IMG/VR virus record: IMGVR_UViG_3300010399_000031 | Location: 124,001-188,000 of that record | Direction: 5' to 3' (one strand) | Length of the DNA stretch: 64,000 nucleotides | The notes under the pieces: model-generated | Told to the model about the DNA's origin: nothing | The model's database searches: none | The model's input: the letters and a program-made list of their open reading frames with translations, nothing else | Translations under genes and position numbers: made by a program | In this document: positions 2,451 through 58,727 of the stretch, piece by piece | Numbering within the stretch: the first letter of the stretch is position 1 | Layout: each line of letters begins with the position of its first letter

Positions 2451-2474
2451 TCAATCAAATAGTTGGAGCTAATC

Positions 2475-3167
2475 ATGAGTCAACTGGGTCAATTTGAACC
2501 GCCTGAGTTCGTTCCGATGCAAGAATCAGGTCCCAATCCGTTCACCCCAACCAGTGGTAATACGGGTGGGACTTGGGTGCCCGAGGAACAACAAACGGCA
2601 ACATGGCGTATCTTTAACAAACTCTATAAGTGTCGTATTTCAGTTTTCCAGACACGCTCGCTCGATGACATTCAGTTTTTTGGAGTGTCTATTTCAGGCG
2701 ATCGAGAGTTTGATGCAACCATGCGAAGTGAAAACCGCCTGTATTACAAGACGGTGGCCCAGATGCTCATGTACTTCAAAAACGACGTAACGGTTGGTTT
2801 GTTCGATGTGCGTGATTCAAAGTTGATCTACGATGACTGTCGTGACCATATGGCTACATGGCAGCGGGTGCTTTTAAAGTCTCCGAACATTAAACCCTCG
2901 CAGGGTACGCTCGACCAACTTCAGCTACTGGATAAATTTGCAGCGACGGTTTATCCACATGCTGCACCGCTTTATACCCAAGAGTTCACTGAATCGGTTC
3001 TTTTGCGGCGCTTCAATGCGGTGGGTTTTGGTAATCTTGGGTTACCTTCGGCGGCGTCTATCCCTGAGGCACCTGAACCGGTGGTTGAGCAAGCCTATTC
3101 ACCACCGTCGCACGATTCGTTTGCAGACGTGTTTGCAAAAAAGCGCAATAATTGGCGGGGAGAATAA
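2475..3167 (+). CDS. conserved jumbo-phage protein in virion block
   Basis: ATG at 2475 after GGAG; stop abuts next gene. Confidence 0.55.
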   Translation: MSQLGQFEPPEFVPMQESGPNPFTPTSGNTGGTWVPEEQQTATWRIFNKLYKCRISVFQTRSLDDIQFFGVSISGDREFDATMRSENRLYYKTVAQMLMYFKNDVTVGLFDVRDSKLIYDDCRDHMATWQRVLLKSPNIKPSQGTLDQLQLLDKFAATVYPHAAPLYTQEFTESVLLRRFNAVGFGNLGLPSAASIPEAPEPVVEQAYSPPSHDSFADVFAKKRNNWRGE

Positions 3168-4562
3168 ATGGACATCCAAGATTCCGCACTGTATCGCGAG
3201 ATCAACGCTATCCTCAGTAGCGGGGTTAAGCCCGTACACTTCGCATGGGCGGCAACAGTGCACGCGAATGGGAAGAACATTCGGGCGATGAAGTTAAGAG
3301 AGATGGACATTCAGCGCGACTATGAAGTTAACTATTCGGATGACATCCATGTTCTATTGGTATTTCCAGCGGGGGATTTCTGGGCCGATATTTACCCGTA
3401 CCATGATAACCTGGAGGTGACGATCTATAAGTACCCTTTATCCGAGGTTGGAGATGCCGCTGATAATAGTTCACCGGTGCAAACTGAACGCTACAAAGCG
3501 ATCTTAAGTATCGGTGATAATGGTTCTCCTTTGTTGGAGAACACGGGCGCCAATAATGATACGCGCGATACGCTCAATTTGAAAGACTTCGTACCAGTGG
3601 AGTTTCAGCTGATTGATCGCTCTCTTTACCAGATGCGGATGATGGAAGTCGGTAATAACTTTCGCAACTGTACAGTCGAGCAAGCACTAAGAGCGATTAT
3701 GACCAGTGAGTCTCAGAAGGTCATCGTCGATCAACAGCGAGTCAATCAAGGGGTGGAGATGGTACCGGCTAATAACCAAACCGTCCGTTCCACTGTCAGT
3801 ATTCCGCAAGGTACAGCTCTGACCGATGTTCCCGCTTGGATTCATCAAAAGTGCGGGGGAGTTTATAGTGCAGGCTTTGGGTACTACCTTCAAAACAATC
3901 ATTGGTATATCTATCCGTGTTATGATCCTACGCGAGTCAATAAAACCGCACCGGCTCTCACGATCATCAATCTACCAAAAAACCGCTTTGTTGGAATAGA
4001 ACGCACTTATCGACTTGATGGAAGTAATTTGGTGGTCCTTGCCACAGGAGACGTTAAATTTCGCGATCGCTCCAATGCCATGCAGTTAAACCGTGGTAAC
4101 GGGGTGCGCTTTGTGGCGGCCGACGAGTTGATTGACAGCTGGGTGACGGTTAAAAACGGCATTCCCATTGCCTCTCGTGGTAAGGTGACAACGGAGGTGA
4201 TGACCACTGCGCGCCCTGACGGAATTAATAATGCACGTGTCAGCCCCCGTGCGATCAATGCTAATCCGTTTGTGGAATATTCGGATATGGCAGCCAGAAA
4301 TGGTTCGCCGTTTGCACTCACCTGGGAGAACTCAGACCCCAGTTTAATTACGCCAGGTATGCTGGCGGTGGTAGTGTATCAGGACGGTGAATCTATCTCG
4401 CAAGTGTATGGCGTAGTGTTAAAGTCCCATACTTTTGTACGAATGCAAGGCAGCGGGATGACTAGTTCTCGACACGCAACTGATACCGCCATCTCGATTT
4501 TTGTGCAACGACCCTTGGGTAACGGTGATAATACCGGCCAAGGAGTGATCACTCTATCGTGA
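3168..4562 (+). CDS. virion structural protein, possibly baseplate hub-like
   Basis: 464 aa, GGAG RBS, beta-rich; hub call is inference only. Confidence 0.5.
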   Translation: MDIQDSALYREINAILSSGVKPVHFAWAATVHANGKNIRAMKLREMDIQRDYEVNYSDDIHVLLVFPAGDFWADIYPYHDNLEVTIYKYPLSEVGDAADNSSPVQTERYKAILSIGDNGSPLLENTGANNDTRDTLNLKDFVPVEFQLIDRSLYQMRMMEVGNNFRNCTVEQALRAIMTSESQKVIVDQQRVNQGVEMVPANNQTVRSTVSIPQGTALTDVPAWIHQKCGGVYSAGFGYYLQNNHWYIYPCYDPTRVNKTAPALTIINLPKNRFVGIERTYRLDGSNLVVLATGDVKFRDRSNAMQLNRGNGVRFVAADELIDSWVTVKNGIPIASRGKVTTEVMTTARPDGINNARVSPRAINANPFVEYSDMAARNGSPFALTWENSDPSLITPGMLAVVVYQDGESISQVYGVVLKSHTFVRMQGSGMTSSRHATDTAISIFVQRPLGNGDNTGQGVITLS

Positions 4563-6107: not shown

Positions 6108-6659
6108 ATGGCAAACATCGTCACCGACTTCACTAAGTCGGCTCAGCAAATCATCATTGATTTGGTGAACAACGACAATTCGCTCGCACTTACGCCGGCG
6201 AAGGTCACGTTCGGCGCACCGACGGCTGCAACGGTCGGTGGCAGCGTTACGCGCGACACCGATTTGACTCTTACAGCCGTGTCGGGTTCAGGTTACAGCG
6301 GTAGTGCAACGATTCACTATAATCGAGTGGATCTGGCTTCGGTACCGGGTGCTCGTTCGACGATCTTCCCGATCGGTGCTGCCGTAAACATTTCTGATCT
6401 CATCGCCGAGATCAATGCAGCGTACGGGATCAATCTCTCGAATACGGCCGACACCGCGCACAAAGACTTTGTCGATGGCCCACTACCAACCTTTTCAGGT
6501 ACGGCCAACGAACAACATCAGTTTCAACTGGCCGCTGACGCCGACTCACTCGTCTGGGAAAACAGTGTACAACTCACCGTACAGGCCAACGATATTCCGC
6601 TTTCGACAGCGATCACGAACCCGACGTTGAACGGTTTGACTTACGTGCAACCGTCGTAA
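6108..6659 (+). CDS. tail/baseplate fibre paralog
   Basis: VTFGAP...DTDLTLTA...GYSGSATIHYNRVDL; ends LNGLTYVQPS. Confidence 0.7.
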   Translation: MANIVTDFTKSAQQIIIDLVNNDNSLALTPAKVTFGAPTAATVGGSVTRDTDLTLTAVSGSGYSGSATIHYNRVDLASVPGARSTIFPIGAAVNISDLIAEINAAYGINLSNTADTAHKDFVDGPLPTFSGTANEQHQFQLAADADSLVWENSVQLTVQANDIPLSTAITNPTLNGLTYVQPS

Positions 6660-6697
6660 CGGTTAATCCGGCGAAAAGCGACTTTCGACCTGGACGA

Positions 6698-6725
6698 GGG
6701 AGGGCTCCGTGCCCTCCCTTTTTAT
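6698..6725 (+). terminator. rho-independent terminator
   Basis: GGGAGGGC-tccgt-GCCCTCCC followed by T run. Confidence 0.75.
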
Positions 6726-6741
6726 TTGTTTAGGGGCACCT

Positions 6742-7542
6742 ATGTCATTGTTACCGGCGACACCAAAAGAGGTCGTGTTGTCGCTGATTGATCAGCAAAA
6801 CACACTACCGACTCCTTTGACTGAGGAGAACTTGTATTTTGGCGCAGCGCGACTCGATACCGATGGGGTGACGACAATACTACCTGTCACAGCGATGCTG
6901 GGCGGGCAGTATGTCGGGTATCGTAATCTCACGTACAAACGAATCAATCTGTCACAGATTTTCGATGTCGCACCGGTTGTTCAGGATGTGGGCGGCCCCA
7001 CCCTGTATTCGATGCTCGATGTCGTCAATAAGAATTTAGGGATGAATTTCACCACGGATGACGTGGTCGATACCAACATCGCCGACTTAAATGCCGGCGA
7101 GCAAGTGAACATCAACATGGTGGCCAAGGCTGGCTCAGCGGGATACATCGGTTCGTTTTTCTTCCGGTTTATCCGCCTGTTTGTCACCTTCTCAACCGTC
7201 ATCAAAAATACCACGCTTAATGCTCTGGTATATCCGGCACATCCGGATCTTGTCAACAGCAAGCGCAATATTGCGATGATGATGTGGGATCACGATTTTA
7301 GCGCTGACATCGCGTCGCTGGGTGTGCGTAACAATACGTGGGTCAATCAAACAGCCGTGGCCACTCTCATGCAGGATTTTGGCATCACAGATTGGCCTGC
7401 TCCCCAGGTCAATGGCGTGTCGGATTACGCGACTGCGAATTATCCGGGATCGAACACCAAGTTCCAGCGCGTAGTGGTGCAAAAGGGCGTGAGTGGTGTG
7501 GATTATGCGGGAGACGCGCTCTTCCACTACAACCCATCCTAA
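6742..7542 (+). CDS. tail fibre paralog with C-terminal ...FHYN domain
   Basis: LYFGAA...YVGYRNLTYKRINL; ends ALFHYNPS. Confidence 0.7.
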   Translation: MSLLPATPKEVVLSLIDQQNTLPTPLTEENLYFGAARLDTDGVTTILPVTAMLGGQYVGYRNLTYKRINLSQIFDVAPVVQDVGGPTLYSMLDVVNKNLGMNFTTDDVVDTNIADLNAGEQVNINMVAKAGSAGYIGSFFFRFIRLFVTFSTVIKNTTLNALVYPAHPDLVNSKRNIAMMMWDHDFSADIASLGVRNNTWVNQTAVATLMQDFGITDWPAPQVNGVSDYATANYPGSNTKFQRVVVQKGVSGVDYAGDALFHYNPS

Positions 7543-14161: not shown

Positions 14162-15844
14162 ATGGCGATCCACGACATGTGGTCGTATGACCATGCCCCA
14201 CAGTTAGGGACTGATATCTCCAGCGGCACTACGTTGAGTGCATATAGCGAGACCGGGACGTACAACCTTCAAACTGGTTTGCCAGGAATGTTGTACAAGA
14301 ATACAAACGCCACGGGGGTCATCGGAAGTGATGGTTTTTTGAAACTCACCACGGTCAGTGGTAGTAATTCAGCACTTTTGATTCAAGCCAAAGAAGTGCA
14401 GGATTGGAGTGTGGCGACCAAGTACTGGCTTGGTTTTCGCACCAAAACTACTTCGCAAAATGGTGCAGCTTGCAATGTCTTTTCGATTTCAGATTCACTC
14501 GCGGATACGAACTTTCAAGCGTTCATCCAAGAGTCGGATATGACGAGTGCGGGGGCAAACACCGCAAATGTGGAGTACTACGTCGAGGTGATGATTGATC
14601 GCACCAACTTACTCTACGAAGTGTGGATTAACAGTGTAAAAGTCAAAAATGGTTCGATCGCAGTAGCCGCTCTTCCCTCCAGTGGAAATGGTTACTATTG
14701 GTACGGGGCGTATAACTCGCTAAGTGGAGTAACGAACGGTTCAACCCGTTGCTTCAGAGATTTCTATTTCCTCGATGTTGATGTAACAACGCCAAGTCGT
14801 TTGGGTTCAATAAAGTCGAGTTTGCAATCGGTTGCGTCGGCCGCCGCGCCGAACTGGGTCGGAGAAACCGGTACTTTATTGGGAACTGCGGTGATTACCG
14901 CTGCACAATCGAAGTTTGGGGGCGCGTGCTTCACACCTGGTTCGACTGCATCCTCGGCGTTATCTATACCGGATGGTCCAAATGTGAAGTGTCTTAGTGG
15001 TGATTTTACCATTGAAACATTTTGCATGTCAACCAATAATGCGCAAATTGGTGTGTTATTTGGTAAAGACAATGGCTCTGCACCCTATGCGCACTTAACG
15101 TATAACAGCAATCAATGGCAATGGAGCGCCGACAGTTCAGGAGCAATCCTTCTTGCTAGTACAGGGGTTGCTGTCAATACATGGATGCACATCGCCATGG
15201 TGCTGCATAATGGCACTTGGACACTGTATCAAAATGGGGTATCATTGGGAACTGCATCGGGTACTACCTATGGTAATAACTCGTTACCATTTTTGATTGG
15301 TAACTACGGCCCACTTACTAATCAGTGGTTGGGTTACATTGATGAGTTTCGCACCAGTAACATTGCGCGTTATACGGGAGCCTTTACGCCACCGGCTGCA
15401 CCATTCACGGTTGATGCGAATACGCTAATGTTACTGCACTTTGACACCAATGTAAATGGTTTGGTAATAGATAGCGCTCTTTCTGCTTCTGCTGCATTTC
15501 AGCAAGCATACGGGACAGTCAGTGCCAACGTCGGTATCCCGCTTATGGCTAACGCACCGACCGATGACACCATGACGGTGGGGTTCTCCACTAGCTATTC
15601 GAGTAACAAGAACATCTTTGCTGTGGACTTTCGTCTTGCTGCAAAGACTCCCAATTCACCGGCGAGCCTCTCAAGCAGCATTCAGCAGGCAACTAACACC
15701 ACTTCGTTCGGTTCGTACTCGTTCTCGGACGGTAGCATGAACTACGGGCGCCGTTTAGGTCTGACCACCAAAGCCCCAGACGGCGGTGTTTGGACTCCCA
15801 GCAAGATTAGCAGCACGTCACTGCTGATTACCCCGACCAGTTAA
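14162..15844 (+). CDS. virion/tail protein with inserted LamG/ConA-like lectin domain
   Basis: paralog of 13070 plus KFGG...GDFTIE...WMHIAMV...YQNG...IDEFR...ARYT. Confidence 0.7.
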   Translation: MAIHDMWSYDHAPQLGTDISSGTTLSAYSETGTYNLQTGLPGMLYKNTNATGVIGSDGFLKLTTVSGSNSALLIQAKEVQDWSVATKYWLGFRTKTTSQNGAACNVFSISDSLADTNFQAFIQESDMTSAGANTANVEYYVEVMIDRTNLLYEVWINSVKVKNGSIAVAALPSSGNGYYWYGAYNSLSGVTNGSTRCFRDFYFLDVDVTTPSRLGSIKSSLQSVASAAAPNWVGETGTLLGTAVITAAQSKFGGACFTPGSTASSALSIPDGPNVKCLSGDFTIETFCMSTNNAQIGVLFGKDNGSAPYAHLTYNSNQWQWSADSSGAILLASTGVAVNTWMHIAMVLHNGTWTLYQNGVSLGTASGTTYGNNSLPFLIGNYGPLTNQWLGYIDEFRTSNIARYTGAFTPPAAPFTVDANTLMLLHFDTNVNGLVIDSALSASAAFQQAYGTVSANVGIPLMANAPTDDTMTVGFSTSYSSNKNIFAVDFRLAAKTPNSPASLSSSIQQATNTTSFGSYSFSDGSMNYGRRLGLTTKAPDGGVWTPSKISSTSLLITPTS

Positions 15845-15863
15845 GGATTTGAGTGAGTAAATC

Positions 15864-16910
15864 ATGACAAAACGAATGATGTATGCGTTCGACCATATCC
15901 CGGTCACTTTGAGTAGTACTGGTGGTAATGTGTCAGCGTATTGTGATTTTCCATTCACCTACGCACCTAGTGGCGGGCTAAACGCTACTACTGGCGGTAC
16001 CATGTCAGATAGTGACGGTGTATGGTTAGCGTCGAACGCTTATTACTACAACACCGTCACCTCAATGGGGCAGTGGTCACACCCCATCAGTAATGTCTTA
16101 GATATAACCAAAGCACGTAACTGGATCGGTTTTCGATTTAAACCAAGCAGCACCTACATTGGCAACCCTTTTGGTTGCACAGTCAATGGGGTCAACCTAG
16201 CGCTCCTTGCCATTTCGGACTTCAGTTGGACTTCTGGCCACAATTACTACATCGAAGTGATGATTGATCACGTCAATCAAACTCGTTCGGTTTGGGTGGA
16301 TGGCTCGCTAGTTGTAAATGCGCAAGCTGTTTCACTTGCTGGCCAAGTGTCTAGCGATAAGTTGATTTTCGGTTTTTCTGCTGGTATTACGGGTAACACA
16401 AGTTGTACGTATCAGTATAAGGATATGTATTTCATGGATGACCCCAATGATGGTTCTGTCTCGCGTTTAGGACCTATCATTTCCCGTCCAATCACCATCA
16501 ACACAGCCAGCGGTAATGGTTGGACACCATCGTCTGGTTCCATCATTGGAGCGCTTAATACGGCGATCAATACATCGACTCCGTCGACCCCGAATATTGC
16601 ATCGGCAAACGATGGTACACCCCTAGCAATGACACTAGCAAGTACGGTGGATCAAGGAGTAGCTGTGCACGGGGTACTTTTCGTGGCCTCTGGTGAACGC
16701 AATTCCGGCACCGGGACGATGTTGAGATCGACGCTTGCTGATCAAGCGACGCCGGCGAATCAATCAACACTCAACGCGTTGCAGTTTTCAAACACGGCAT
16801 TCCAATATGGTCGCACCATGGGTTTTACACCATTTGCACCAGATGGTAGTACATGGAATGCAACCAAGATTGCGGCGATGAATCTTTCAAGCGTTGCAAG
16901 TGCCACATAA
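15864..16910 (+). CDS. virion/tail protein, second paralog family
   Basis: YAFDHIP...WIGFRF...YYIEVMIDH...KDMYF...SRLGPI. Confidence 0.65.
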   Translation: MTKRMMYAFDHIPVTLSSTGGNVSAYCDFPFTYAPSGGLNATTGGTMSDSDGVWLASNAYYYNTVTSMGQWSHPISNVLDITKARNWIGFRFKPSSTYIGNPFGCTVNGVNLALLAISDFSWTSGHNYYIEVMIDHVNQTRSVWVDGSLVVNAQAVSLAGQVSSDKLIFGFSAGITGNTSCTYQYKDMYFMDDPNDGSVSRLGPIISRPITINTASGNGWTPSSGSIIGALNTAINTSTPSTPNIASANDGTPLAMTLASTVDQGVAVHGVLFVASGERNSGTGTMLRSTLADQATPANQSTLNALQFSNTAFQYGRTMGFTPFAPDGSTWNATKIAAMNLSSVASAT

Positions 16911-16925
16911 GTCGGGAGTGGATTG

Positions 16926-18251
16926 ATGTCAACTACTTTTCGAAAAACCTCAGCGGTTGTCTGGACGCAGGATCCCTCCCCGATTGCGGTTCGGAAAACT
17001 CACGCGTTGGCTTTTGCCAGTGATGTGGGGCTTACATTACGCAACATCCAAGGATTCGCTTTTGAAACCGTACCTCCGGGTATGACGCTACGCAATATTC
17101 AAGGGTTTGCCTTTGAGCGCGCACCACTGGCTATCCCGGTTAATGTTACGGGTGACTTGGCCCTTTACACACTCATCAATAACAATCGGAAACCAGGAGT
17201 ATCGATTACCTGGTCAGCCAGTAACAGCGCGTTAGGAACACCAGTCGCCGACAACACCTATGGTACGACCAATACCCGTATCTCACTTTCTGCCAAATCA
17301 AACAGCGGATACAACGGGTCAGTCAATTTGTTTTATACGCGCCGCTCGATTACTGACGCTGTCTTAGGTTCAGTATCGCTGGGGACGATCTCGTCGGCCA
17401 CGACAGTGGTATCGATGCTACCTACGATCAATTCGAAGTATGGATTGAATCTAACAGCACAGGACGTAGTTGATGGACCGGTAGCGGCTGGTGCGACGTT
17501 TATTACACTTACAATCGCATCATCAAGTTGGGTGTTTTTACCTGGTTCAGTTGTTGCTGTTGGGATCGTTACGAGTTTGGCATCGGCAACGCCCGTTGTG
17601 GATCTACTCGGTTTTGACAACGCGGCCGGGGTGGGGCCGTCGCCGTTTACGAAGGCATTGCTCCATTTCGATGGTAATTTTTCAGATGCTTCTGGCCGAA
17701 TTTGGACAGCAGCGGCCGGAGCAACAACTGAGTCTTCGACGGTTAAATTCGGCAGTGGTGCTTTCCAAAATACAGGGGTGGTTGGGAAATACATCAGCAC
17801 CCCAGACGCCAATGATCTGCATCTAACAGGTGACTTTACAGTCGAGGGGTTTATTAACCCAAATAACATCACTCAGAGTCAAGTTCTAATTATCAAGGGA
17901 TCGGCTTCACCCAACACTGGTGCGCGTTTGATTTTAAGTTCTGGTCAAATTTTCGCTTATGACGACGCTGTAAGTAACCAGATGAGTGGCGGGTCGATCT
18001 CGACAGGAAGTTGGTATCACGTGGCATTGGTTAAATACAACGGTACAGCGACGATCTATGTTGGTGGTAGTCCGGTAGCTAGTAGTACATCATTTGGTAC
18101 CTTCGGTAACAACAATTATCCGCTTTATGTGGGTACGGCGTCCGACGGCTCTTTCCCGATGTATACCACGATGGATGAACTACGTATCAGTGCCGAAGCT
18201 CGTTACAAATCCAGCTTCACACCACCTACGTCGTCGTTCGTGTTCGACTGA
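16926..18251 (+). CDS. tail fibre paralog with C-terminal LamG-like domain
   Basis: internal family-1 domain (LGTP...NTRISL...GYNGSVNLFYTR) then LLHFDG...GDFTVE...WYHVALV...MDELR. Confidence 0.7.
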   Translation: MSTTFRKTSAVVWTQDPSPIAVRKTHALAFASDVGLTLRNIQGFAFETVPPGMTLRNIQGFAFERAPLAIPVNVTGDLALYTLINNNRKPGVSITWSASNSALGTPVADNTYGTTNTRISLSAKSNSGYNGSVNLFYTRRSITDAVLGSVSLGTISSATTVVSMLPTINSKYGLNLTAQDVVDGPVAAGATFITLTIASSSWVFLPGSVVAVGIVTSLASATPVVDLLGFDNAAGVGPSPFTKALLHFDGNFSDASGRIWTAAAGATTESSTVKFGSGAFQNTGVVGKYISTPDANDLHLTGDFTVEGFINPNNITQSQVLIIKGSASPNTGARLILSSGQIFAYDDAVSNQMSGGSISTGSWYHVALVKYNGTATIYVGGSPVASSTSFGTFGNNNYPLYVGTASDGSFPMYTTMDELRISAEARYKSSFTPPTSSFVFD

Positions 18252-18354
18252 TTTTGAACATTTCATCTAAAAAAATAAGGCAATCCTATGCAGGCTGCCT
18301 ATTTAGCGGCCTCATTCCGAGGGCCCCCCCTCTCTTTCCTGATTGGAGTAATCC

Positions 18355-18885
18355 ATGTCAAAAATCGACTCAACCAAGTCAGCCATCGATAACGTGTTGG
18401 TGCTGGTCAATGCCGCTAACAGCACGTCCATTGTCAACACGCAAGTCACGGCTGGTACCCCGACGGCTCAAACCGCAGACGGCCAAGGACGCAACACACA
18501 ACTCACGCTCACAGCGGTAGGTGGACAAGGTTTCACTGGTTCGCAGACCTACACGTACGTGCGACGTGGGTTGAACGATTCGGTTTTGAGTCCAGTTGAC
18601 AGTTACACTGCCGCGCACGGTATCGATGCCACGGCGCTGCTCGACGCACTGTGCACACAACTTGGTCTCGTGAACACGGATGTGCACCTGGAAGATCCAG
18701 CCAATGCTGGAGTGGCACTGTCCGGATCGATCACAGCAGATCAAGCAACACTCGATCTCGTGGCAAACGCCAACTCGCTACTGTACGTGGATGCTTCGAG
18801 CCAGGCCATTACGATGACTTGGACGCACGACCTTGCTGCCGCAACGCCGACCACGGCGCTTACGGGTTTCGACGCAGCCAGTTAA
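18355..18885 (+). CDS. tail fibre paralog (short)
   Basis: AGTP...RNTQLTLT...GFTGSQTYTYVR. Confidence 0.7.
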   Translation: MSKIDSTKSAIDNVLVLVNAANSTSIVNTQVTAGTPTAQTADGQGRNTQLTLTAVGGQGFTGSQTYTYVRRGLNDSVLSPVDSYTAAHGIDATALLDALCTQLGLVNTDVHLEDPANAGVALSGSITADQATLDLVANANSLLYVDASSQAITMTWTHDLAAATPTTALTGFDAAS

Positions 18886-18976
18886 TTATTTGGCGTACTC
18901 AGCAGTTGGGGGATTCCCCCAACTGCTTTTATGCCCCAATCTAATGAAGTCCCTTATCTTTCACTTGGATGTTGAC

Positions 18977-20059
18977 ATGCAAATCGACCCTAGCAAAAGC
19001 GCCATGCAAAATTTGTTGAACTTGATTGACTCGGCCAGTGGTAATAGCGCTGGTCCAACCAATCCCAATCAAGTCACTTATCAAAACCTTCAGGCCGCTA
19101 CCTTAGAAGGCGACGCAGCGGCTAATACTTCGGTTGAACTCGTTGGTGTCACGGACAATGGCTTTACGGGTAATCAAACGTATTACTACGGACGACTTGA
19201 CCCCGCAGCCGAAGTAACTTCTCCAACAAGTCACGCAGTGGTACCGGCTGGCACCACCGATGCACCCACCATCTTGGGAATTGTGGCTAACCATTATGGT
19301 TTTATCGAATCGGAAATTAGTTGGGTGAGTACACCCACCAAACCGAGTACGATGTCCTCCGATCCTACGACTTCCACTCCAGTTGTACAAACAAGCAATT
19401 CGTTGATTTATTTGGATGGGCAAGCAAATATCAATTTGGATTGGCAAGCGTCAACGGTTGCACTGCTCCACTTTGATGGCGATGTTACCGATCAACGCGG
19501 GCACACTGCGACCAATGTGGGGAGTAATACCTGGGCATCCAGCAATAGTGGTCCGATTAAATTCGGCACAGACGCGCTAGGTATTGGAAGTGGTGGTTCG
19601 TGCGTGGAACTCGCCGATCCAGGTGATTTGACGTTCTTGAATAACTTCACAATCGAAAGTGAAGTGTATCTCGCCTCGCACGGGGGTTACCTGTGGGCAA
19701 AAAACGATGGTACAAATTCTTGCTATGCCTTCATGGATAGCACCACAAAAAACTTCAACGTTAAAACGGATACAGCAAGTGTGGTGACGGTTGGTAACTA
19801 TGGTTCAATCCAGAACCAATATAACCATATCGCACTTACCAAAAACGGTACGACTTGGACCGTATGGGTCAACGGGGTGGCTATCGGTACATTCACCAGT
19901 TCGGATAGTTTTGGCAACATCAGTACGTTTTGGACGATCGGTAACATGAACAACGCCAATAACCCGGTTGCCGCTAACCTCGATGAAACTCGCTTTAGCC
20001 GAGTATGTCGTTACACAAGCGCTTTTACCCAACCGAGTGCTGCGTTCACACTCGATTAA
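18977..20059 (+). CDS. tail fibre paralog with C-terminal LamG-like domain
   Basis: N-terminus nearly parallels 18355 gene; LLHFDG...FTIE...YNHIAL...LDETR. Confidence 0.7.
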   Translation: MQIDPSKSAMQNLLNLIDSASGNSAGPTNPNQVTYQNLQAATLEGDAAANTSVELVGVTDNGFTGNQTYYYGRLDPAAEVTSPTSHAVVPAGTTDAPTILGIVANHYGFIESEISWVSTPTKPSTMSSDPTTSTPVVQTSNSLIYLDGQANINLDWQASTVALLHFDGDVTDQRGHTATNVGSNTWASSNSGPIKFGTDALGIGSGGSCVELADPGDLTFLNNFTIESEVYLASHGGYLWAKNDGTNSCYAFMDSTTKNFNVKTDTASVVTVGNYGSIQNQYNHIALTKNGTTWTVWVNGVAIGTFTSSDSFGNISTFWTIGNMNNANNPVAANLDETRFSRVCRYTSAFTQPSAAFTLD

Positions 20060-20187: not shown

Positions 20188-20212
20188 TAGAATTTTTCAG
20201 ACATATATTCTT
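20188..20212 (+). promoter_or_regulatory. putative phage early promoter motif (copy 1)
   Basis: TAGAATTTTTCAGACATATATTCTT; aligns with 42204 and 54804; TATAT core recalls phiKZ early promoters (inference). Confidence 0.55.
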
Positions 20213-42203: not shown

Positions 42204-42228
42204 TAGAAAATCTCAGTTATATATTCTT
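42204..42228 (+). promoter_or_regulatory. putative phage early promoter motif (copy 2)
   Basis: TAGAAAATCTCAGTTATATATTCTT. Confidence 0.55.
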
Positions 42229-45785: not shown

Positions 45786-46388
45786 ATGAGCGACGCAAAC
45801 ACCAACGAAATCCGCCTTCACACGTACCAAAGTAGTCTCATCCCGGTTTATCAACCGGAAAGCAAACAGTATTTTTGTGAATTCACCCAACCGACCAAGA
45901 TCGAAGTCGACGGCGCGGCATTCGAGACGAATTACCTGAAACCGGATGTTCAATTCTCGCTACTTGGTCTGAGCCAATCGATCAGCTTGCTCGAAAGCGG
46001 TTTACTGGACGTGACCGATGCGATCGATCCGGACATGAGTCTCGCCGAGATCGCGATCACCTTCAAGCACAATGGCGAAGACCACGTCTGGTATCACAAG
46101 CTGGAAACGCCCGAAAGTGCCGATCCTCTTGGCGCATTCACCTATTCACCGCAAGGCGGTTATCACGTACTTCAGCTGAACTACGCCGGTGTCATCGTCA
46201 TGACCTCGAAAGCGAATGTCACGAACTCGATTGGCGTGAACGGCTTCGGAACCTGCAATTTGGAACTCGGCAACACCAAACTCAACTTCAAGATCACGAA
46301 CCGAGAAGACGCCGACTTCACCGACGTGCGCGTCGTCGGCTATAAGCTCAAAGCCAAACGCGTGAATTACAACCGTCGACCGGCATAA
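45786..46388 (+). CDS. hypothetical protein
   Basis: 200 aa, strong C-ending codon bias. Confidence 0.7.
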   Translation: MSDANTNEIRLHTYQSSLIPVYQPESKQYFCEFTQPTKIEVDGAAFETNYLKPDVQFSLLGLSQSISLLESGLLDVTDAIDPDMSLAEIAITFKHNGEDHVWYHKLETPESADPLGAFTYSPQGGYHVLQLNYAGVIVMTSKANVTNSIGVNGFGTCNLELGNTKLNFKITNREDADFTDVRVVGYKLKAKRVNYNRRPA

Positions 46389-53361: not shown

Positions 53362-54060
53362 ATGACGACTTCATCAGTTGAAACTACACTTCAGTCGCTT
53401 ATGGATGCGATTGTCTCCGGGGAATTCGAATACGGCGTGCCGCCGCAAGACGTGTTGGCGTTGCGCTACAATGTCAGTCGGACCGTGCTGCGCGAAGCGA
53501 TTGCCAAGTTGGAAGCCAACAACGTCTTGGACTCGCGCCCCAAGATCGGCACCAAGGTCAAACCGCGTAGCGAGTGGCTCTTGATCAACCAGATCATCTC
53601 GCAAAACTACTTCAAGAACAATTCCAGCAAGCAGCAGTTGGGTGATACGTTGGACTTGTTCTACACGGCGGGGTCTCACGCCGCGTACCTGACGAGCGGG
53701 CGCATCGAATCCGTGCTCGAAATCTTTCCACCATTTGAGTTCGATGTTCAAGGTGTTGCCGAGATGCACCGGTGGATCTTCGAGAAATGCGGTAACGCCA
53801 TCTACGCACAGATGGGTACTCTCATGGAGGAGTTCATCTTGGCAACTGCGGATGCGGCTGGACTGGAGAACCCGAAGTCCACGAATCTGTACTACCACCG
53901 CAACATCTACTCGATACTCGCAGGAGAGAAGCACCCCAAGACCATGGAGTTTTTACGCCAAGCGTATTCGAATCTTTACCACTCGATGTATCAGTGCATT
54001 TTCTCCGAGTCCACTAAACCGGTCTTCCGAGATACACCGAAAGAAGAGAAGGTGTCTTAA
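53362..54060 (+). CDS. GntR (FadR-type) transcriptional regulator
   Basis: IVSGEF...LALRYNVSRTVLREAI..LEA...L.SRPKIGT.V.PRSEW. Confidence 0.85.
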   Translation: MTTSSVETTLQSLMDAIVSGEFEYGVPPQDVLALRYNVSRTVLREAIAKLEANNVLDSRPKIGTKVKPRSEWLLINQIISQNYFKNNSSKQQLGDTLDLFYTAGSHAAYLTSGRIESVLEIFPPFEFDVQGVAEMHRWIFEKCGNAIYAQMGTLMEEFILATADAAGLENPKSTNLYYHRNIYSILAGEKHPKTMEFLRQAYSNLYHSMYQCIFSESTKPVFRDTPKEEKVS

Positions 54061-54119: not shown

Positions 54120-54746
54120 ATGAGAATCCCGATCGATAGTGTTTCAAAGAAACCGGTGTGGTGGGCGTGGGGAGATGGCGGTCACAAAGTTGTGAGTGAC
54201 TTCGCGGGTAAGAGGATTGTAGCGGTTCAGCCTAAGGTGCCGGGTCAATTGAATAATCCGCTCCCGCAATGGTCAACAAATATGGAAGAGCTTACAGCGA
54301 TGCCGAAGAATTACTCCGGCTGGGTGTTGAAGCATCATGAGAGAAAACAAACGATCGAGGAGTTCAACCAAGGAATAGCGGTAGTCGAGTACGACTATGC
54401 TTACTTCTTCCTGCGTCGTCTCGAAGATGTAACTGAAAATCGCATCGTTATCAAGCTCAACAACGTACAGCTTTACGAGATGCGCAGCGCCCGTAAGAGT
54501 TTTCTTGAATTGACTGACAAGGAAGACGATGAATTGGTCAAACCGATGCTCACCTCAGAGGTTGCACTTTACGATGAAGATTTGAAATTCATCGGAAGTA
54601 TCAATCCTTTTTATTCTATCAATAGCGGTGGGTTCGATTCGATAGAAATCTTGATCGATACTCGCAGCGCCGAGCAGATTGCAGCAAGCGATGCTGCGTG
54701 GGAGCGTAGTGAGCGCGAGCGGGTAGCGCGCGGTGCGTTGATGTAA
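54120..54746 (+). CDS. hypothetical protein
   Basis: GAGGTG RBS, 208 aa. Confidence 0.65.
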   Translation: MRIPIDSVSKKPVWWAWGDGGHKVVSDFAGKRIVAVQPKVPGQLNNPLPQWSTNMEELTAMPKNYSGWVLKHHERKQTIEEFNQGIAVVEYDYAYFFLRRLEDVTENRIVIKLNNVQLYEMRSARKSFLELTDKEDDELVKPMLTSEVALYDEDLKFIGSINPFYSINSGGFDSIEILIDTRSAEQIAASDAAWERSERERVARGALM

Positions 54747-54764
54747 AACGATTGACAGCATATT

Positions 54765-54795
54765 GGGAGGAAATACTCCTCCCTCTTTTTTTTTT
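54765..54795 (+). terminator. terminator insulating the array operon
   Basis: GGGAGGA...TCCTCCC + T10. Confidence 0.75.
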
Positions 54796-54803
54796 GTCTA
54801 TTC

Positions 54804-54828
54804 TAGAAAATTTGAGACATATATAACT
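54804..54828 (+). promoter_or_regulatory. putative phage early promoter motif (copy 3), array leader
   Basis: TAGAAAATTTGAGACATATATAACT, about 20 nt before first array unit. Confidence 0.55.
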
Positions 54829-54846
54829 TACTGGATTAGACTAGGT

Positions 54847-55755
54847 ATTTAATCAAACTCCAACAAACACCCAATAAGTATTAGTGTATCAAATTGCCGT
54901 AATCATCCATTGTTGGACAGTGTATCATTGAAAGAATAATCACTCATTAGCCATTAGTGTATCAATCGCATATATTCACCCAGGTGACGTAAGTGTATCA
55001 ATCAGCCCCATTCACCCATTGGAATAAAGTGTATCAATGTCCAATAACCACCCACTGCTTACTAGTGTATCACAGTGAACTAGACACCCAATCGAGAATA
55101 GTGTACCACGTTACGGTATTCACCCAATGGATGCGAGTGTATCAATGCAAGCCATACATCCAAACAAAGAAAGTGCGTCAAGATACCAGAACCACACAGT
55201 ACGAGGTAACGCATCAAACAAGGCAAAACATCCATCGTGAAAGAGTGTATCAGTCGACCCAATCACCCATTGAAGGAAAATGAGACGTATCGGATTAGAC
55301 AACCCGTGATGGCCATCGAATCAAGGACCTCAATTCATCCAGAAAAGGAAAGTGCATCAATGGAACGAAGTCGCCCAAGAGAGTAAAATGTATCAGAAGA
55401 GGTGAATCGCCCGTGGTTATTCAATGTATCAAACGGCCACAGTCACCCAGTATAGCGGAGTGCATCAATAGCAGACATTCACACAAGGTGGGTCAGTGTA
55501 TCATGGAAAGTTAATTACCCATGGCATGAGAGTGTATTAGAGGATCAAAGACATCCAATCCCAAGCAATGTATCATAGTAGGGAATTCACCCAGTTGGAA
55601 CAAATGTATCAAAATGTCGTATTCACCCATTCTTTGAAAATGCACCATCACCCCTTATTCATCCACCAAAAGGAAGTGTATCAAGAAGCACAACTCACCC
55701 ATTGGGTTGTAGTGTATCAACAGCAGCAATTCACCCAATGCGATACAGTGTCGCC
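54847..55755 (+). ncRNA. TIGR-like dual-repeat guide RNA array (25 x ~36-bp units plus partial terminal repeat)
   Basis: period 36 nt: ARTGYATCA - 9-nt spacer - A(T/A/G)TCACCCA - 9-nt spacer; repeat A starts at 54883, 54919, 54956, 54992 ... 55675, 55711, 55747; reading frames interrupted by stops; directly 5' of Nop-domain gene. Confidence 0.88.
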
Positions 55756-55812
55756 CACCACGACACACTAAGAAACCATTTTTATTCGAACTAAAGAAAG
55801 GAATAGAGCACC

Positions 55813-57066
55813 ATGAGCCAAGAAACGATTATCCCCACATACAACCCGAACATCTCCGTGATTCGCACGATGGTGCGCTCAGCTTACGACATGCAACTGT
55901 TGCGCATCCAGATGGGCAACCGCGTGACCGCCAGCTTCAAAGTCAAGCTCGGCCTTCGCCAAGACGGCATGAGTGAGAAGGACCTCGAAAAGCAAGAAAA
56001 GGGTCTACTCGATCAGCTACGTGCTTCTTACGCCCGCATCACCGACGGCATCATCGAAGAGCATGGTGAAGACATCAAGGTCAAGAAGTTGCCGACTGAA
56101 AAGAAGTTCGTCGGCGATGAGCTGATTACCCACTACAGCGAATTGTTGCTCGTAGATAACTACCTGGCTACGCTCAGGAATGAAGAGCGACATTTCAAGG
56201 ACATGGAGAAGATCCTAAAGAAGATCCCGGTCTACACCGAGTTCCTCGAAAACGTTCGTGGTATTGGTCCAGCCATGGCGGGCGTGATCATCTCCGAGAT
56301 TGACATCTACAAGGCGCAGTATCCGTCTAGCCTTTGGATGTTGGCAGGGCTCGATGTCGTTCACGTCGGTAAGTACACCGACGATAAAGGGGTCGAGCGC
56401 ACAGTGCGGGGTTGGGAGATCGACCAATGGTACTCCAACGACCAGAACATCGATAAGGAGTTCCTCGCTGAAGGCAAGTACCCGGTTCACTTCGAAGCCC
56501 ATGGTCGTTCGCGTAAAGAGTTTTGTCTCGTGCGACGCACCTACGTCAACAAAGCGGGTGAGCAAAGTGAGCGTGACTCAATCACGTTCAATCCGTTTCT
56601 GAAGACGAAGTTGGTCGGGGTGCTCGGCACGTCTTTCTTGCGTGCTGGTATCGCAACGGTTGATGGTAAGAAGACCGGTGGTGCGGCTCGCTTGGCACTT
56701 GCCAAGGCAGAAGGGTTCGATCCGAAGGATTACGTTGAGATGGACGAAGATCAAGCAGTGATCGTCTACCTACGTGCTAAGGGTCACGAGGTTGTGGTGG
56801 AGCCGAGCCCTTACTCGGTGATTTACAACAACTACAAGAACCGTCTGAACAACGATCCGCGTCACATCGAGAAGAGCGCGCTTCACAAGCACAACATGGC
56901 CATTCGCTACATGGTCAAGCGTTTTCTGGTTGACCTCTATAACCACTGGCGTAAGCTGGAAGGTTTGGTTGTCGCCCCGGAGTATTCGGAAGGGGTACTC
57001 GGCAAAGTACACGGTGAAGCTAAGGAAGCTGGTTGGCAACATCCGCGCTATCGTAGGTCCGCTTAA
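55813..57066 (+). CDS. TasA-like Nop-domain RNA-guided protein (IS110 C-terminal/Nop56-58-related), no RuvC or HNH
   Basis: coiled N-terminus (YDMQ.LRI..GNR), L..VRGIGP..AG.IISEID...PSSLW..AGL, FNPFLKTKL, H..A.R..VK.FL.DLY..WR.LEG; 57 nt after array. Confidence 0.82.
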   Translation: MSQETIIPTYNPNISVIRTMVRSAYDMQLLRIQMGNRVTASFKVKLGLRQDGMSEKDLEKQEKGLLDQLRASYARITDGIIEEHGEDIKVKKLPTEKKFVGDELITHYSELLLVDNYLATLRNEERHFKDMEKILKKIPVYTEFLENVRGIGPAMAGVIISEIDIYKAQYPSSLWMLAGLDVVHVGKYTDDKGVERTVRGWEIDQWYSNDQNIDKEFLAEGKYPVHFEAHGRSRKEFCLVRRTYVNKAGEQSERDSITFNPFLKTKLVGVLGTSFLRAGIATVDGKKTGGAARLALAKAEGFDPKDYVEMDEDQAVIVYLRAKGHEVVVEPSPYSVIYNNYKNRLNNDPRHIEKSALHKHNMAIRYMVKRFLVDLYNHWRKLEGLVVAPEYSEGVLGKVHGEAKEAGWQHPRYRRSA

Positions 57067-57093
57067 ATCCAGTCATTCAGAGAGGAATTTACC

Positions 57094-57468
57094 ATGAGCA
57101 TCAAAGAACTTCTGGAACCGTTTCAAGTCGACGCTGAACAGCAACCGATTACACCCGAAGTGTTTTTTGCACGAAGCTTTCAAGTCGCATTGAGGGACCT
57201 GAATATCACTTCGGTGAAATGGGACGAACTGATGTCGGCGTATCTGGAGAAACACTTCGCTGCACAAGGGGTGGTGGCAACTCGTGCAGATATTAAATCT
57301 GCACGAGCAAACCTCTCGAAGCAACTGTGCGAACTGAACATGTCGTGGAAAGTCTATCTGAAGGGCATGGAAATGCTCGGCTTCGATATGGTCAATATCC
57401 GACTTGCTGGCGTCAAGCAGGAAGAGGTCCAGACTACCTTGGGATTAGCGGTTAAGCTTCCTCAATAA
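57094..57468 (+). CDS. conserved jumbo-phage hypothetical protein
   Basis: GAGGA RBS; ANL.KQL...NMSWKVY.KG motif. Confidence 0.65.
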   Translation: MSIKELLEPFQVDAEQQPITPEVFFARSFQVALRDLNITSVKWDELMSAYLEKHFAAQGVVATRADIKSARANLSKQLCELNMSWKVYLKGMEMLGFDMVNIRLAGVKQEEVQTTLGLAVKLPQ

Positions 57469-57490: not shown

Positions 57491-57520
57491 GAGAGCTTCG
57501 GCTCTCCCTTTTCTTTTTTT
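57491..57520 (+). terminator. terminator GAGAGC-TTCG-GCTCTC (copy 3) closing array/tas operon
   Basis: hairpin plus T run. Confidence 0.75.
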
Positions 57521-57582: not shown

Positions 57583-57924
57583 ATGAGTGAGAGAAAGTTG
57601 TTTGGAATCGGTCAACGTGTGACCCACTTCGACGGGGGTCCAGGTACGCATGGTAAAGGTACGATCGTCGCTTATAACGGTGTGAAGCCAGATAGCTATG
57701 CGGCTAAGAATCCCGCTAAGGCAGCTGAATTAGTGGCTGGGTGTTTTACTGACCCGAAACTGAAAGAAGCGATGGCGGGCGCTTTGGTCAACAGCTTCTA
57801 CGATGGTGATCGATATCCCTACGTCGTACAGTGGGATCCGCGTGTCGACGATAGCGACATCGCGCGGAAATACCCGAATGGGTACAAAGACGTCTACGGT
57901 GACGAACTCAAACCCATCGAGTGA
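57583..57924 (+). CDS. hypothetical protein
   Basis: AAGGGA RBS, 113 aa. Confidence 0.7.
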   Translation: MSERKLFGIGQRVTHFDGGPGTHGKGTIVAYNGVKPDSYAAKNPAKAAELVAGCFTDPKLKEAMAGALVNSFYDGDRYPYVVQWDPRVDDSDIARKYPNGYKDVYGDELKPIE

Positions 57925-57977: not shown

Positions 57978-58727
57978 TTACTCTATCGACGTAACGCTCC
58001 AGAAGTCTTCAGCCAGATCTGGCGAAAGGACATAGTCGAAGGGCAGGTAGAAGTAACCATTTTCACCCCAGCCCGATCCCCAGCTATTCCTAATAATGAA
58101 GAGACGCTTGATGCGATCGTAACCGACGATCAACACGGCGTGACCACCCAAGCATTGTTCCTTGTTCACATCGGGCATGGGTACCAAACCGCTGGCTGCC
58201 ACTTCGTCCGATTCGAGCGAATCGTAGACGTAGATGCCAAAGGCGATCGGGTAACCCGATGCAAGCGCGTGCAAAAGGTCGTCTTCGGTTTGATTCACAC
58301 GGCGGTACGCAATCGCTTTGTGTTTCAAAGCGTCGTTGTACGCTTCGAGCGAGGGCTTCAGTTTGAAGTTTTCCTCGACGTACGGACACAGCGTTTCGTT
58401 GCAGGTACCCAGCTGTGCGATCACTTTGATGCCGTCGCGGATCTCGGCACCCGAGTCTTCCGTGAGTGTGCCTTCGAGACCGCGCTCGCCGTAGTAGACG
58501 AAAAGGCGCGAGAGACGAATCGGTTGCTCACGCTGTTTGTTCTCGTCGTACTCCAGCGCCCCGACGATGGCGTGGGCCGTGCACGAACCCAACTCACCTT
58601 GGTCTTCGACCGGGGAGCAGCCAGGGCGCAAATCGATCTGGTCGGGAATATCGATCGGTGCAGCTGCCGAGTATTTGTGGTCACGCGGATCGTGTTTGTC
58701 TTTGACACGATTGTACAGTCGCTTCAT
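57978..58727 (-). CDS. papain-family (C1A) cysteine peptidase
   Basis: DQGELGSCTAHA (catalytic Cys), GGHAVLIVGY (His), IRNSWG..WGENGY (Asn). Confidence 0.92.
   Translation of the reverse strand: MKRLYNRVKDKHDPRDHKYSAAAPIDIPDQIDLRPGCSPVEDQGELGSCTAHAIVGALEYDENKQREQPIRLSRLFVYYGERGLEGTLTEDSGAEIRDGIKVIAQLGTCNETLCPYVEENFKLKPSLEAYNDALKHKAIAYRRVNQTEDDLLHALASGYPIAFGIYVYDSLESDEVAASGLVPMPDVNKEQCLGGHAVLIVGYDRIKRLFIIRNSWGSGWGENGYFYLPFDYVLSPDLAEDFWSVTSIE

What the first reader, a model, noticed from the sequence alone, without database searches (positions are those of the whole stretch)
54847..57066. RNA-guided TIGR-Tas-type system in a jumbo phage: 25-unit dual-repeat array plus Nop-domain effector
Seen: a strict ~36-nt period over 900 bp made of two alternating 9-nt repeats (ARTGYATCA and A(T/A/G)TCACCCA, nearly all ending YCA) separated by two unique 9-nt spacers. 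Example: 54992 AGTGTATCA-atcagcccc-ATTCACCCA-ttggaataa. It gives about 50 distinct spacers and is followed 57 nt later by a Nop/IS110-C-terminal-like gene. Known: TIGR arrays (Faure et al., Science 2025) have this 36-nt dual-spacer layout and guide Nop-domain Tas proteins to dsDNA, with the two spacers pairing to opposite strands. Inference: this phage carries a programmable DNA-targeting system aimed at competitor phages, mobile elements or host loci. A phiKZ-like context and the targets may be undescribed.
Basis: partly seen in the sequence, partly recalled or inferred. Interest (0 to 1): 0.96.

Follow-up and report, generated by a model that had tools for sequence, protein, structure and literature searches.

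The report
TIGR guide array with TasA, jumbo phage
A 243-kb phiKZ-like phage carries a genuine TIGR-Tas system, with 25 short dual-spacer guide RNAs next to a nuclease-less Nop-fold protein, which is a new example of a kind described in 2025 rather than a new kind, and its targets remain unknown.

Summary
Window 54847-55746 (+) holds 25 head-to-tail units, 23 of them exactly 36 nt. Each unit is an edge repeat (AGTGTATCA), a 9-nt spacer, a loop repeat (ATTCACCCA) and a second 9-nt spacer, giving 50 distinct spacers. The region is non-coding and ends in a truncated edge repeat.

The 417-aa gene at 55813-57066 models with confidence. Its ten best PDB fold matches are all TasH or TasR structures, followed by Nop5 and IS621. 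It nearly reaches NCBI's TIGR-Tas model (93 bits against a cut-off of 100). It keeps the tyrosine and histidine used for guide processing. It has no HNH or RuvC domain, so it is a TasA.

Of 31 related viral loci, 28 carry a 36-nt array next to the gene, and so does the cultured jumbo phage phiRSL1.

The most likely mechanism is RNA-guided DNA binding or repression, not cutting.

I found no targets in the window, in related loci, or in phiRSL1's whole genome for its own guides. Self-regulation is therefore unlikely, and the aim of the guides stays open.

This is a new member of a known kind, of moderate interest. Distinctive points are two insertions in the Nop domain, the long array, complete spacer turnover between relatives, and a cultured relative in which function could be tested.

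The parts
54765..54783 (+). Intrinsic terminator of the upstream gene (54120-54746), marking the 5' boundary of the TIGR transcription unit
   Evidence: GGGAGGAAATACTCCTCCC followed by T10: 7 pairs, 5 of them G-C.
54804..54824 (+). Candidate phage promoter motif TAGAAwwTnTsAGnnATATAT, 23 nt upstream of the first unit
   Evidence: Three + strand intergenic copies in the window (20188, 42204, 54804) against 0.09 expected by chance, aligned. This is inference; no transcription data are available.
54847..55746 (+). [quoted passage not shown]
   Evidence: Non-coding. Identical in three further metagenome assemblies that could be compared base for base; a fourth has a 1-bp length difference at the array's upstream flank and was not compared. 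The transcript is less structured than shuffled sequence, z = +2.8.
55747..55768 (+). 3'-truncated terminal edge repeat (AGTGT) running into a 6-bp hairpin, GUGUCG/CGACAC
   Evidence: whole 55740-55812 fragment, which holds a second stem as well: -11.9 kcal/mol, z = -3.0. No adjacent U-run, and the terminator scan did not call it. Relatives lack the hairpin, and their arrays run straight into the tas ribosome-binding site.
55813..57066 (+). tasA: a 417-aa Nop-domain TIGR-associated protein without a nuclease domain. It has N-terminal coiled-coil helices (12-46, 55-78, 108-135), two clade-specific insertions (about 186-225 and 279-331) and the C-terminal Tyr391/His400 loop
   Evidence: AF2 pLDDT 85. 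Foldseek top 10 are TasH/TasR, probability 1.0. phmmer and hmmsearch against PDB hit 9mty and TasH. NCBIfam NF052498 gives 93.4 bits. Alignments.
57094..57468 (+). 124-aa ORF of unknown function between tasA and the next terminator. It is probably co-transcribed but is not a conserved partner
   Evidence: PHROG families of unknown function only. No homolog next to tas in related loci.
57491..57506 (+). Terminator-like hairpin that probably ends the array-tasA transcription unit
   Evidence: GAGAGCTTCGGCTCTC followed by a T-rich tail.

Best explanation
This is a TIGR-TasA system of a phiKZ-like jumbo phage.

Inferred steps:
- The 0.9-kb array is transcribed on the + strand from just upstream of 54847, probably together with tasA.
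- TasA dimers bind the edge and loop repeats of the precursor.
- The conserved Tyr391/His400 loop cuts within each edge repeat. This releases about 25 different 36-nt tigRNAs, each carrying two 9-nt spacers.
- Because the protein has no HNH or RuvC domain, the outcome is stable binding, such as a block to transcription or replication, and not cleavage.
- The targets lie outside the phage's own genome: host, plasmid, prophage or rival phage DNA.

Shown here: the array architecture, the Tas fold, the absence of a nuclease domain, conservation of the Tyr/His loop, and the recurrent linkage of gene and array.

Taken from published work on other Tas proteins and not tested here: expression, processing, DNA binding and repression.
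For: Array anatomy matches the published definition of two alternating 8-12 nt repeats, 9-nt spacers and a 36-nt unit. Both repeats end in YCA/CCA, the position of the box C motif. The array ends in a 3'-truncated edge repeat, as described for TIGR arrays.

Protein evidence:
- Foldseek top 10 are all TasH or TasR complexes, then Nop5, IS621 and Prp31.
- A profile search against PDB gives 9mty at 3e-21 and TasH at 4e-14.
- NCBIfam TIGR_Tas_endo gives E = 2e-26.
- SpTasH catalytic Y289 aligns with Y391. H400 lies two residues after the position aligned to H296. Y391 is at least 90% conserved and H400 is invariant in 40-41 homologs.
- The N-terminus starts directly at the coiled coil, so there is no nuclease domain. 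The insertions carry no conserved acidic or histidine constellation.

Linkage: 28 of 31 IMG/VR relatives, two further 217-246 kb contigs and phage phiRSL1 all have a co-oriented array of about 36-nt period beside the gene.

The array RNA is depleted in secondary structure. TasA proteins have been shown experimentally to bind 36-nt tigRNAs and to act as RNA-guided repressors.
Against: There are no expression or processing data for this locus, and no target was found for any guide.

The 5' ends of the two repeats differ (AGUG against AUUC), so a covarying box D motif as in TasR arrays (UG) is not evident.

The NCBIfam score is just below the curated cut-off. His400 is offset by two residues from SpTasH His296 in the pairwise alignment.

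Five units have degenerate repeats and may be non-functional.

The two Nop-domain insertions have no assigned role, so an added activity cannot be excluded.
Confidence: 0.82

Rival explanations
1. It is a TIGR-Tas system that destroys its targets. The TasA RNP would recruit or activate a separate nuclease, or one of the two Nop-domain insertions would supply a cryptic catalytic activity.
For: TasH and TasR relatives are nucleases. This clade carries about 95 extra residues of unknown role.
Against: There is no HNH or RuvC domain by Pfam, NCBIfam or fold. The insertions are poorly conserved and have no invariant Asp, Glu or His residues. No conserved neighbouring gene accompanies tas.
Confidence: 0.08
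2. It regulates the phage itself. The guides would bind sites in the phage's own genome to time gene expression or to help DNA transactions.
For: TasA represses transcription when targeted to a gene. The authors list regulation of the viral life cycle as one possibility.
Against: None of the 25 guides has a composite match with 1 mismatch or fewer in the 64 kb in hand, which is 26% of the genome. The best matches are indistinguishable from shuffled-pair controls. If targets were spread evenly over the genome, about 6 would be expected, and the chance of seeing none is about 5e-4. The 36 guides of phiRSL1 have no self-target in its complete 231-kb genome.
Confidence: 0.05
3. It is a decaying relic. 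The array and gene are inherited but no longer work.
For: Five of the 25 units have degenerate repeats, and two units are off-length.
Against: The ORF is intact, and the Tyr/His loop and more than 50 nearly invariant residues are kept. The array is identical in three further samples that could be compared. Repeats are conserved while spacers vary. Relatives keep arrays of 20-55 units.
Confidence: 0.04
4. It is a DNA-level repeat, such as iterons or binding sites for a phage protein like the nearby GntR regulator, or a repetitive coding sequence. The Nop gene would then be an IS110-type transposase remnant.
For: PHROGs and the GenBank record of phiRSL1 call the homolog a transposase. A GntR gene lies 0.8 kb upstream.
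Against: There is no DEDD/RuvC or Tnp domain, and the IS110 model scores only 17.9 bits against a cut-off of 140. The array has stops in all frames and frame-breaking 35- and 37-nt units. The repeats are strand-asymmetric and always co-oriented with tas. GntR is not linked to tas in relatives.
Confidence: 0.01

Closest known systems
FpTasA / TIGR-TasA (Flavonifractor plautii; Faure et al. 2025, PMC12045711) and MbTasA (Xu et al. 2026 preprint)
   Same: A solo Nop-domain Tas protein with no nuclease, next to a dual-repeat array of 36-nt units. The N-terminal coiled-coil motif has the same type, IxxxVxGxYDxQxLRIxxGNR. TasA binds 36-nt tigRNAs and represses transcription.
   Different: This protein has 417 aa, against about 280 aa in the minimal relatives, because of two insertions in the Nop domain. 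The array lies upstream and is long, 25 units against the reported mode of 5-15. The host is a 243-kb phiKZ-like phage. I made no direct sequence comparison with FpTasA.
SpTasH (Salicola phage CGphi29; PDB 9w03, 9w04, 21kl)
   Same: It is the best structural match, with Foldseek E = 3e-7 and probability 1.0. It is phage-encoded, has a dual-repeat array, and has the C-terminal Tyr/His guide-processing loop.
   Different: SpTasH has an N-terminal HNH nuclease and cuts DNA. This protein has none. Sequence identity is about 15%.
TaTasR (PDB 9mty)
   Same: Nop fold, coiled-coil dimer architecture and 36-nt tigRNA. It is the best sequence hit in the PDB, at 3e-21 with the profile.
   Different: TasR carries a RuvC nuclease. 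Its repeats start with UG and end with CCA, whereas here the edge repeat is AGUGUAUCA and the loop repeat is AUUCACCCA.
Ralstonia phage phiRSL1 ORF034 (NC_010811, annotated 'transposase')
   Same: A homolog with 30% identity over 94% of the length, in a cultured 231-kb jumbo phage. An unannotated array of about 37 units lies at 14258-15571.
   Different: The phage lineage is different (Mieseafarmvirus, not phiKZ-like). The array lies downstream of the gene. Repeats are 8 nt with 10-nt spacers. The protein has 345 aa and lacks the two insertions.
IS110/IS621 bridge-RNA recombinases and archaeal box C/D Nop5
   Same: They share the Nop RNA-binding fold. They appear as weaker Foldseek matches (E = 0.3-1, probability 0.5-0.9).
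   Different: Here there is no DEDD/RuvC or Tnp catalytic domain, no single bridge RNA, no fibrillarin or L7Ae partners, and no K-turn guide.

Membership tests
TIGR-Tas system | Array of two distinct alternating 8-12 nt repeats separated by spacers of about 9 nt, with a unit of about 36 nt | tested here: met
   25 units, 23 of them 36 nt. Two 9-nt repeats and spacers of 9 nt (range 8-10). Definition.
TIGR-Tas system | Adjacent gene for a Nop-domain Tas protein | tested here: met
   AF2 model with pLDDT 85. Foldseek top 10 are TasH/TasR, then Nop5, IS621 and Prp31. PDB profile hits. NCBIfam NF052498 gives E = 2e-26 and 93.4 bits, just under the cut-off of 100.
TIGR-Tas system | Box C (CCA) and box D (UG) motifs flank the spacers and covary between edge and loop repeats | tested here: inconclusive
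   Both repeats end in YCA (edge UCA in 22/25 units, loop CCA in 22/25) and start with an invariant A. The same holds across related arrays. The 5' parts differ (AGUG against AUUC), so no common UG-type box D is seen.
TIGR-Tas system | [quoted passage not shown] | tested here: met
   AGTGT at 55747-55751, followed by a short hairpin. The hairpin is not a canonical terminator, and read-through into tasA is likely.
TIGR-Tas system | Tyr/His dyad on the C-terminal loop for autonomous pre-tigRNA processing (dual-repeat systems) | tested here: met
   SpTasH Y289 aligns with Y391. An invariant H400 lies two residues after the position aligned to H296.
TIGR-Tas system | Array transcribed and processed into 36-nt tigRNAs bound by the Tas protein | not testable with these tools
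   This needs small-RNA sequencing and a pull-down. Indirect support only: co-orientation, an upstream promoter-like motif, and a transcript poor in structure.
TIGR-Tas system | Tandem-spacer recognition of both DNA strands at an 18-bp target | not testable with these tools
   No natural target was found. 18-mers are too short for searches across whole databases, and two scans of IMG/VR gave hits at chance level.
TasA subtype | No N-terminal HNH or RuvC nuclease domain | tested here: met
   The alignment starts at the coiled coil at residue 12. No nuclease family appears in Pfam or NCBIfam.
TasH / TasR subtypes | N-terminal HNH or RuvC nuclease fused to the Nop domain | tested here: not met
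   As in the TasA row above. The matches to TasH and TasR cover only their coiled-coil and Nop parts.
IS110-family transposase | DEDD/RuvC-like N-terminal domain, C-terminal Tnp domain and a single bridge RNA | tested here: not met
   NF033542 scores 17.9 bits against a cut-off of 140 and matches only the RNA-binding region. Pfam PF01548 and PF02371 are not detected.
CRISPR-Cas | Direct repeats of 25-40 nt with spacers of similar size, plus cas genes | tested here: not met
   Repeats are 9 nt and of two kinds. There are no cas genes nearby and no PADLOC hit.

The most novel reading that the evidence does not exclude
A lineage of phiKZ-like jumbo phages uses an enlarged TasA, carrying two insertions in its Nop domain, together with long and rapidly changing guide arrays of 25-55 guides. 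These would act as an offensive RNA-guided silencing repertoire against host or rival-element DNA. The phage's own genome would be spared because it holds no matching sites, and possibly because it is physically sequestered. Guide sets would be replaced by an unknown mechanism of unit gain and loss that acts all along the array.
Probability: 0.15. Interest if true: 0.75.

Novelty: new member of a known kind. Interest (0 to 1): 0.45.

Why it matters
The natural function of TIGR-Tas systems, and of nuclease-less TasA in particular, is still open. Most loci sit on short metagenomic contigs with no host or target.

This case adds three things:
- a complete 243-kb phage context;
- a clade of TasA-bearing jumbo-phage contigs;
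- a cultured relative, phiRSL1, whose annotated 'transposase' sits beside an unannotated array of about 37 guides.

The self-target tests came out negative, and guide sets are fully replaced between phages whose TasA is about 80% identical. Together these point to external, fast-changing targets.

For annotation, 'transposase' labels on such genes (PHROG 4285, phiRSL1 ORF034) are misleading, and the arrays go unannotated.

Tried and rejected
- **Similarity and family scans.** Megablast of the locus against cultured phages gave no match. Rfam gave no family. Pfam gave nothing significant for the protein, and PADLOC gave nothing.
- **Self-targeting in the window.** I tested both strand orders and gaps of 0-2 nt. 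The best matches were 13-16 of 18, the same as shuffled-pair controls.
- **Cross-targeting.** 106 guides from relatives were scanned against the window, and the window's guides against 493 kb of other phage loci. Both gave chance level.
- **Self-targeting in phiRSL1.** The complete genome was fetched and scanned. No target was found.
- **The one guide conserved in L007-L011.** Two IMG/VR scans gave 3 + 3 gapped hits on unrelated contigs. This is the chance level, as expected for 18-mers. I therefore spent no further collection scans on window guides, and I did not use the metagenome or genome scans. About 17 chance hits per pattern are expected in 596 Gb.
- **Conserved accessory genes.** I looked for a ParB-like partner or similar. 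None was found, and the neighbours are not conserved with tas.
- **A sigma-70 promoter.** Nothing above shuffled expectation. The 8-mer TATATAAC alone is not significant.
- **A solitary edge+loop-like match at 42096.** It lies inside an ORF and is at chance level.
- **Faure et al. supplement.** A search for this contig or for phiRSL1 found nothing, but the stored table is truncated, so this is inconclusive.
Full report
**Observation**

Reading 54600-57300 and registering the repeats shows 25 complete head-to-tail units between 54847 and 55746 on the + strand. Each unit has four parts:
- a 9-nt edge repeat, consensus AGTGTATCA;
- spacer A;
- a 9-nt loop repeat, consensus ATTCACCCA;
- spacer B.

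Twenty-three units are exactly 36 nt. Unit 3 is 37 nt and unit 12 is 35 nt. Conserved repeat positions carry 1.4-2.0 bits, while spacer positions carry 0.02-0.55 bits. All 50 spacers differ.

The lag-36 self-match fraction reaches 0.61 against a background of 0.27 +/- 0.04, and no other region of the window shows this. The region has 10-22 stop codons in every frame, and gene callers left it empty on four public contigs. After the last unit comes a truncated edge repeat (AGTGT), then a 6-bp hairpin, then the ribosome-binding site and ATG of a 417-aa ORF at 55813-57066.

**Context**

The same sequence lies on contigs of 243-244 kb from four independent metagenomes, plus one 17.7-kb fragment. 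It is also IMG/VR entry IMGVR_UViG_3300010399_000031. The array is identical in the three fetched copies that could be compared base for base. L004 has a 1-bp length difference at the array's upstream flank and was not compared.

Virion genes in the window match PHROG and Pfam families of phiKZ-like phages. Their best relatives are Burkholderia phage FLC9 and Ralstonia phages RP12, RP31 and RSL2, at 33-39% identity. I did not test whether the phage forms a nucleus-like compartment.

**The protein**

Pfam gives nothing significant, and PHROGs calls it a 'transposase'. The following evidence identifies it as a Tas protein:
- phmmer against PDB sequences finds only TasR (9mty, 3e-8) and TasH (4e-6).
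- A 41-sequence profile raises these to 3e-21 and 4e-14.
- An AlphaFold2 model built on 40 homologs has mean pLDDT 85.
- The ten best Foldseek matches to that model in the PDB are all TasH or TasR complexes (probability 1.0). Archaeal Nop5, the IS621 bridge-RNA recombinase and Prp31 follow.
- NCBIfam NF052498, 'TIGR-Tas system RNA-guided endonuclease', matches at E = 2e-26 with 93.4 bits. This is just under the cut-off of 100 because the match is split by insertions.

The chain begins directly with the coiled-coil helices. There is no HNH or RuvC domain, so the protein is a TasA.

Compared with relatives of about 283 aa, it has two insertions, at about 186-225 and 279-331. These are weakly conserved and carry no catalytic-looking constellation.

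The residues that process the guide precursor in SpTasH are Y289 and H296 (PMC13421893). They correspond to Y391 and to an invariant H400 two positions further along the same loop.

**Linkage of gene and array**

- Of 31 IMG/VR loci that encode a relative, 28 show a 36-nt periodic array directly upstream or downstream of the gene. In those where a repeat consensus could be read it lies on the tas strand, with edge repeats of the form A-R-Y-G-..-Y-C-A and loop repeats ending in CCA.
- Two more distant members, on contigs of 246 and 217 kb, do the same.
- The only hit among 50,697 cultured phage records is Ralstonia jumbo phage phiRSL1 ORF034 (30% identity, annotated 'transposase'). A 1.4-kb stretch with no annotated gene follows it and holds 74 alternating 8-nt boxes, about 37 units.
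- The family is large: 1,827 clusters at 50% identity with E <= 1e-3, and 435 with E <= 1e-30. Thirteen of the best 120 hits lie on contigs of 205-285 kb.

**Transcription unit (inference)**

A strong terminator at 54765-54783 closes the upstream gene. A 21-nt motif at 54804-54824 recurs at two other + strand intergenic sites, giving 3 matches against 0.09 expected. It is a candidate phage promoter.

The hairpin after the array lacks a U-run, and relatives have none there. The array and tasA are therefore probably one transcript, ending at the hairpin at 57491-57506.

The 941-nt array transcript folds less stably than every one of 20 shuffles (z = +2.8). This fits a precursor that must stay accessible.

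**Targets**

From the published geometry, spacer A pairs with one strand and spacer B with the adjacent stretch of the other, and gaps of 0-2 bp are tolerated. I built both possible orders and scanned with shuffled-pair controls:
- In the window, the best matches are 13-16 of 18, the same as the controls. The window is 26% of the genome. If the guides targeted the phage's own genome evenly, about 6 hits would be expected, and the chance of none is about 5e-4.
- The 106 distinct guides of close relatives do not hit the window above control.
- The window's guides do not hit 493 kb of other phage loci.
- The 36 guides of phiRSL1 have no self-target in its complete genome.
- The one guide that is identical in all five close relatives gave only chance-level hits in IMG/VR.

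Searches of whole databases with 18-mers are uninformative. The published authors report the same difficulty.

**Array evolution**

Relatives whose TasA is 78-80% identical (L007-L011) use the same repeats but share no guide with the window. Among themselves they share 10-14 guides in collinear order, interleaved with unshared units along the whole array. Shared guides differ by 0-3 substitutions. Units are therefore gained and lost at internal positions, and not only at one end.

The array-tasA module also sits on the other side of a conserved neighbouring gene (orf113) in those relatives, and no accessory gene travels with it.

**Comparison with what is known**

The locus meets the structural definition of a dual-repeat TIGR-Tas system of the TasA subtype (PMC12045711). 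By analogy with FpTasA and MbTasA, it should act as an RNA-guided DNA binder and repressor (preprint 10.64898/2026.09.09.750476).

It differs in four ways: the two insertions in the Nop domain, the array length, the upstream position of the array, and the jumbo-phage host. The covarying UG box D motif described for TasR arrays is not evident here.

No paper in the searchable library links TIGR-Tas to jumbo or phiKZ-like phages. Even so, TIGR arrays are known to be predominantly viral, and this contig is in the databases that were mined.

**Verdict**

It is a new member of a known kind. The effector is a binder, not a cutter, and the targets are unknown and probably external to the phage. Interest is moderate. 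Its main value is as a full-genome, partly culturable setting in which the native role of TasA can be tested.

Noticed in passing
L001:4950-6400 (= NC_010811.2 14258-15571): Ralstonia jumbo phage phiRSL1 ORF034, annotated 'transposase', is a TasA homolog. The 1.4-kb gene-free stretch after it is an unannotated TIGR array of about 37 units, with 8-nt boxes (AGYG..CC and AGWC..CC) and 10-nt spacers. This gives a cultured system for the family.
   Followed up: yes
window 20188-20208, 42204-42224, 54804-54824 (+): The motif TAGAAwwTnTsAGnnATATAT recurs at three + strand intergenic sites, each just after a G-rich or terminator-like stretch (3 matches against 0.09 expected). It is a candidate phage-specific promoter and is absent from the related loci.
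   Followed up: partly
window 45786-46388 (+): A 200-aa ORF matches only positions 141-255 of the 635-position PhiKZ_MCP profile. The 2 kb upstream holds several short + strand ORFs in different frames. No full-length major capsid gene is apparent in the window, so this could be a fragment, a paralog or a split gene.
   Followed up: no
window 53362-54060 (+) and 57978-58727 (-): A phage-encoded GntR-family HTH regulator lies two genes upstream of the array. A papain-like (Peptidase_C1) cysteine protease lies on the opposite strand, in a block that is otherwise + strand. Neither is linked to tas in relatives.
   Followed up: partly
L007, L008, L010, L011 (arrays at about 2000-4000): One guide (spacers ATCTGCTCC and TTGTGATAG) is identical in all the close relatives. 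This includes L008, which shares only 1-2 guides with each of the others. The pattern suggests selection for a conserved target, but none was found.
   Followed up: partly
window 57583-57924 (+); L007:1998-2297, L010:1774-2085, L011:1575-1886: The 113-aa ORF downstream of tasA in the window has 61-64% identical homologs that lie upstream of the array in the relatives. The array-tasA module therefore occupies a different position relative to this gene.
   Followed up: partly
L038:20117-21160: A TnpB-like gene (OrfB_IS605 / Cas12f1-like_TNB) lies about 9 kb downstream of tas on a 217-kb phage-like contig. That genome would hold a second RNA-guided family.
   Followed up: no
window 14162-20059 (+): Three of four consecutive ORFs (560, 442 and 408 aa; the 348-aa ORF between the first two does not) share a C-terminal domain that matches PHROG 3545 and baseplate-wedge or virion-protein families. 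They look like paralogous tail or baseplate proteins.
   Followed up: no
L015:2906-3609 and 6168-6929: A related locus carries two arrays of an 18-nt tandem repeat (AGGTAT.TGGTAATGCT) on either side of its tas gene and TIGR array. Their nature is unknown.
   Followed up: no
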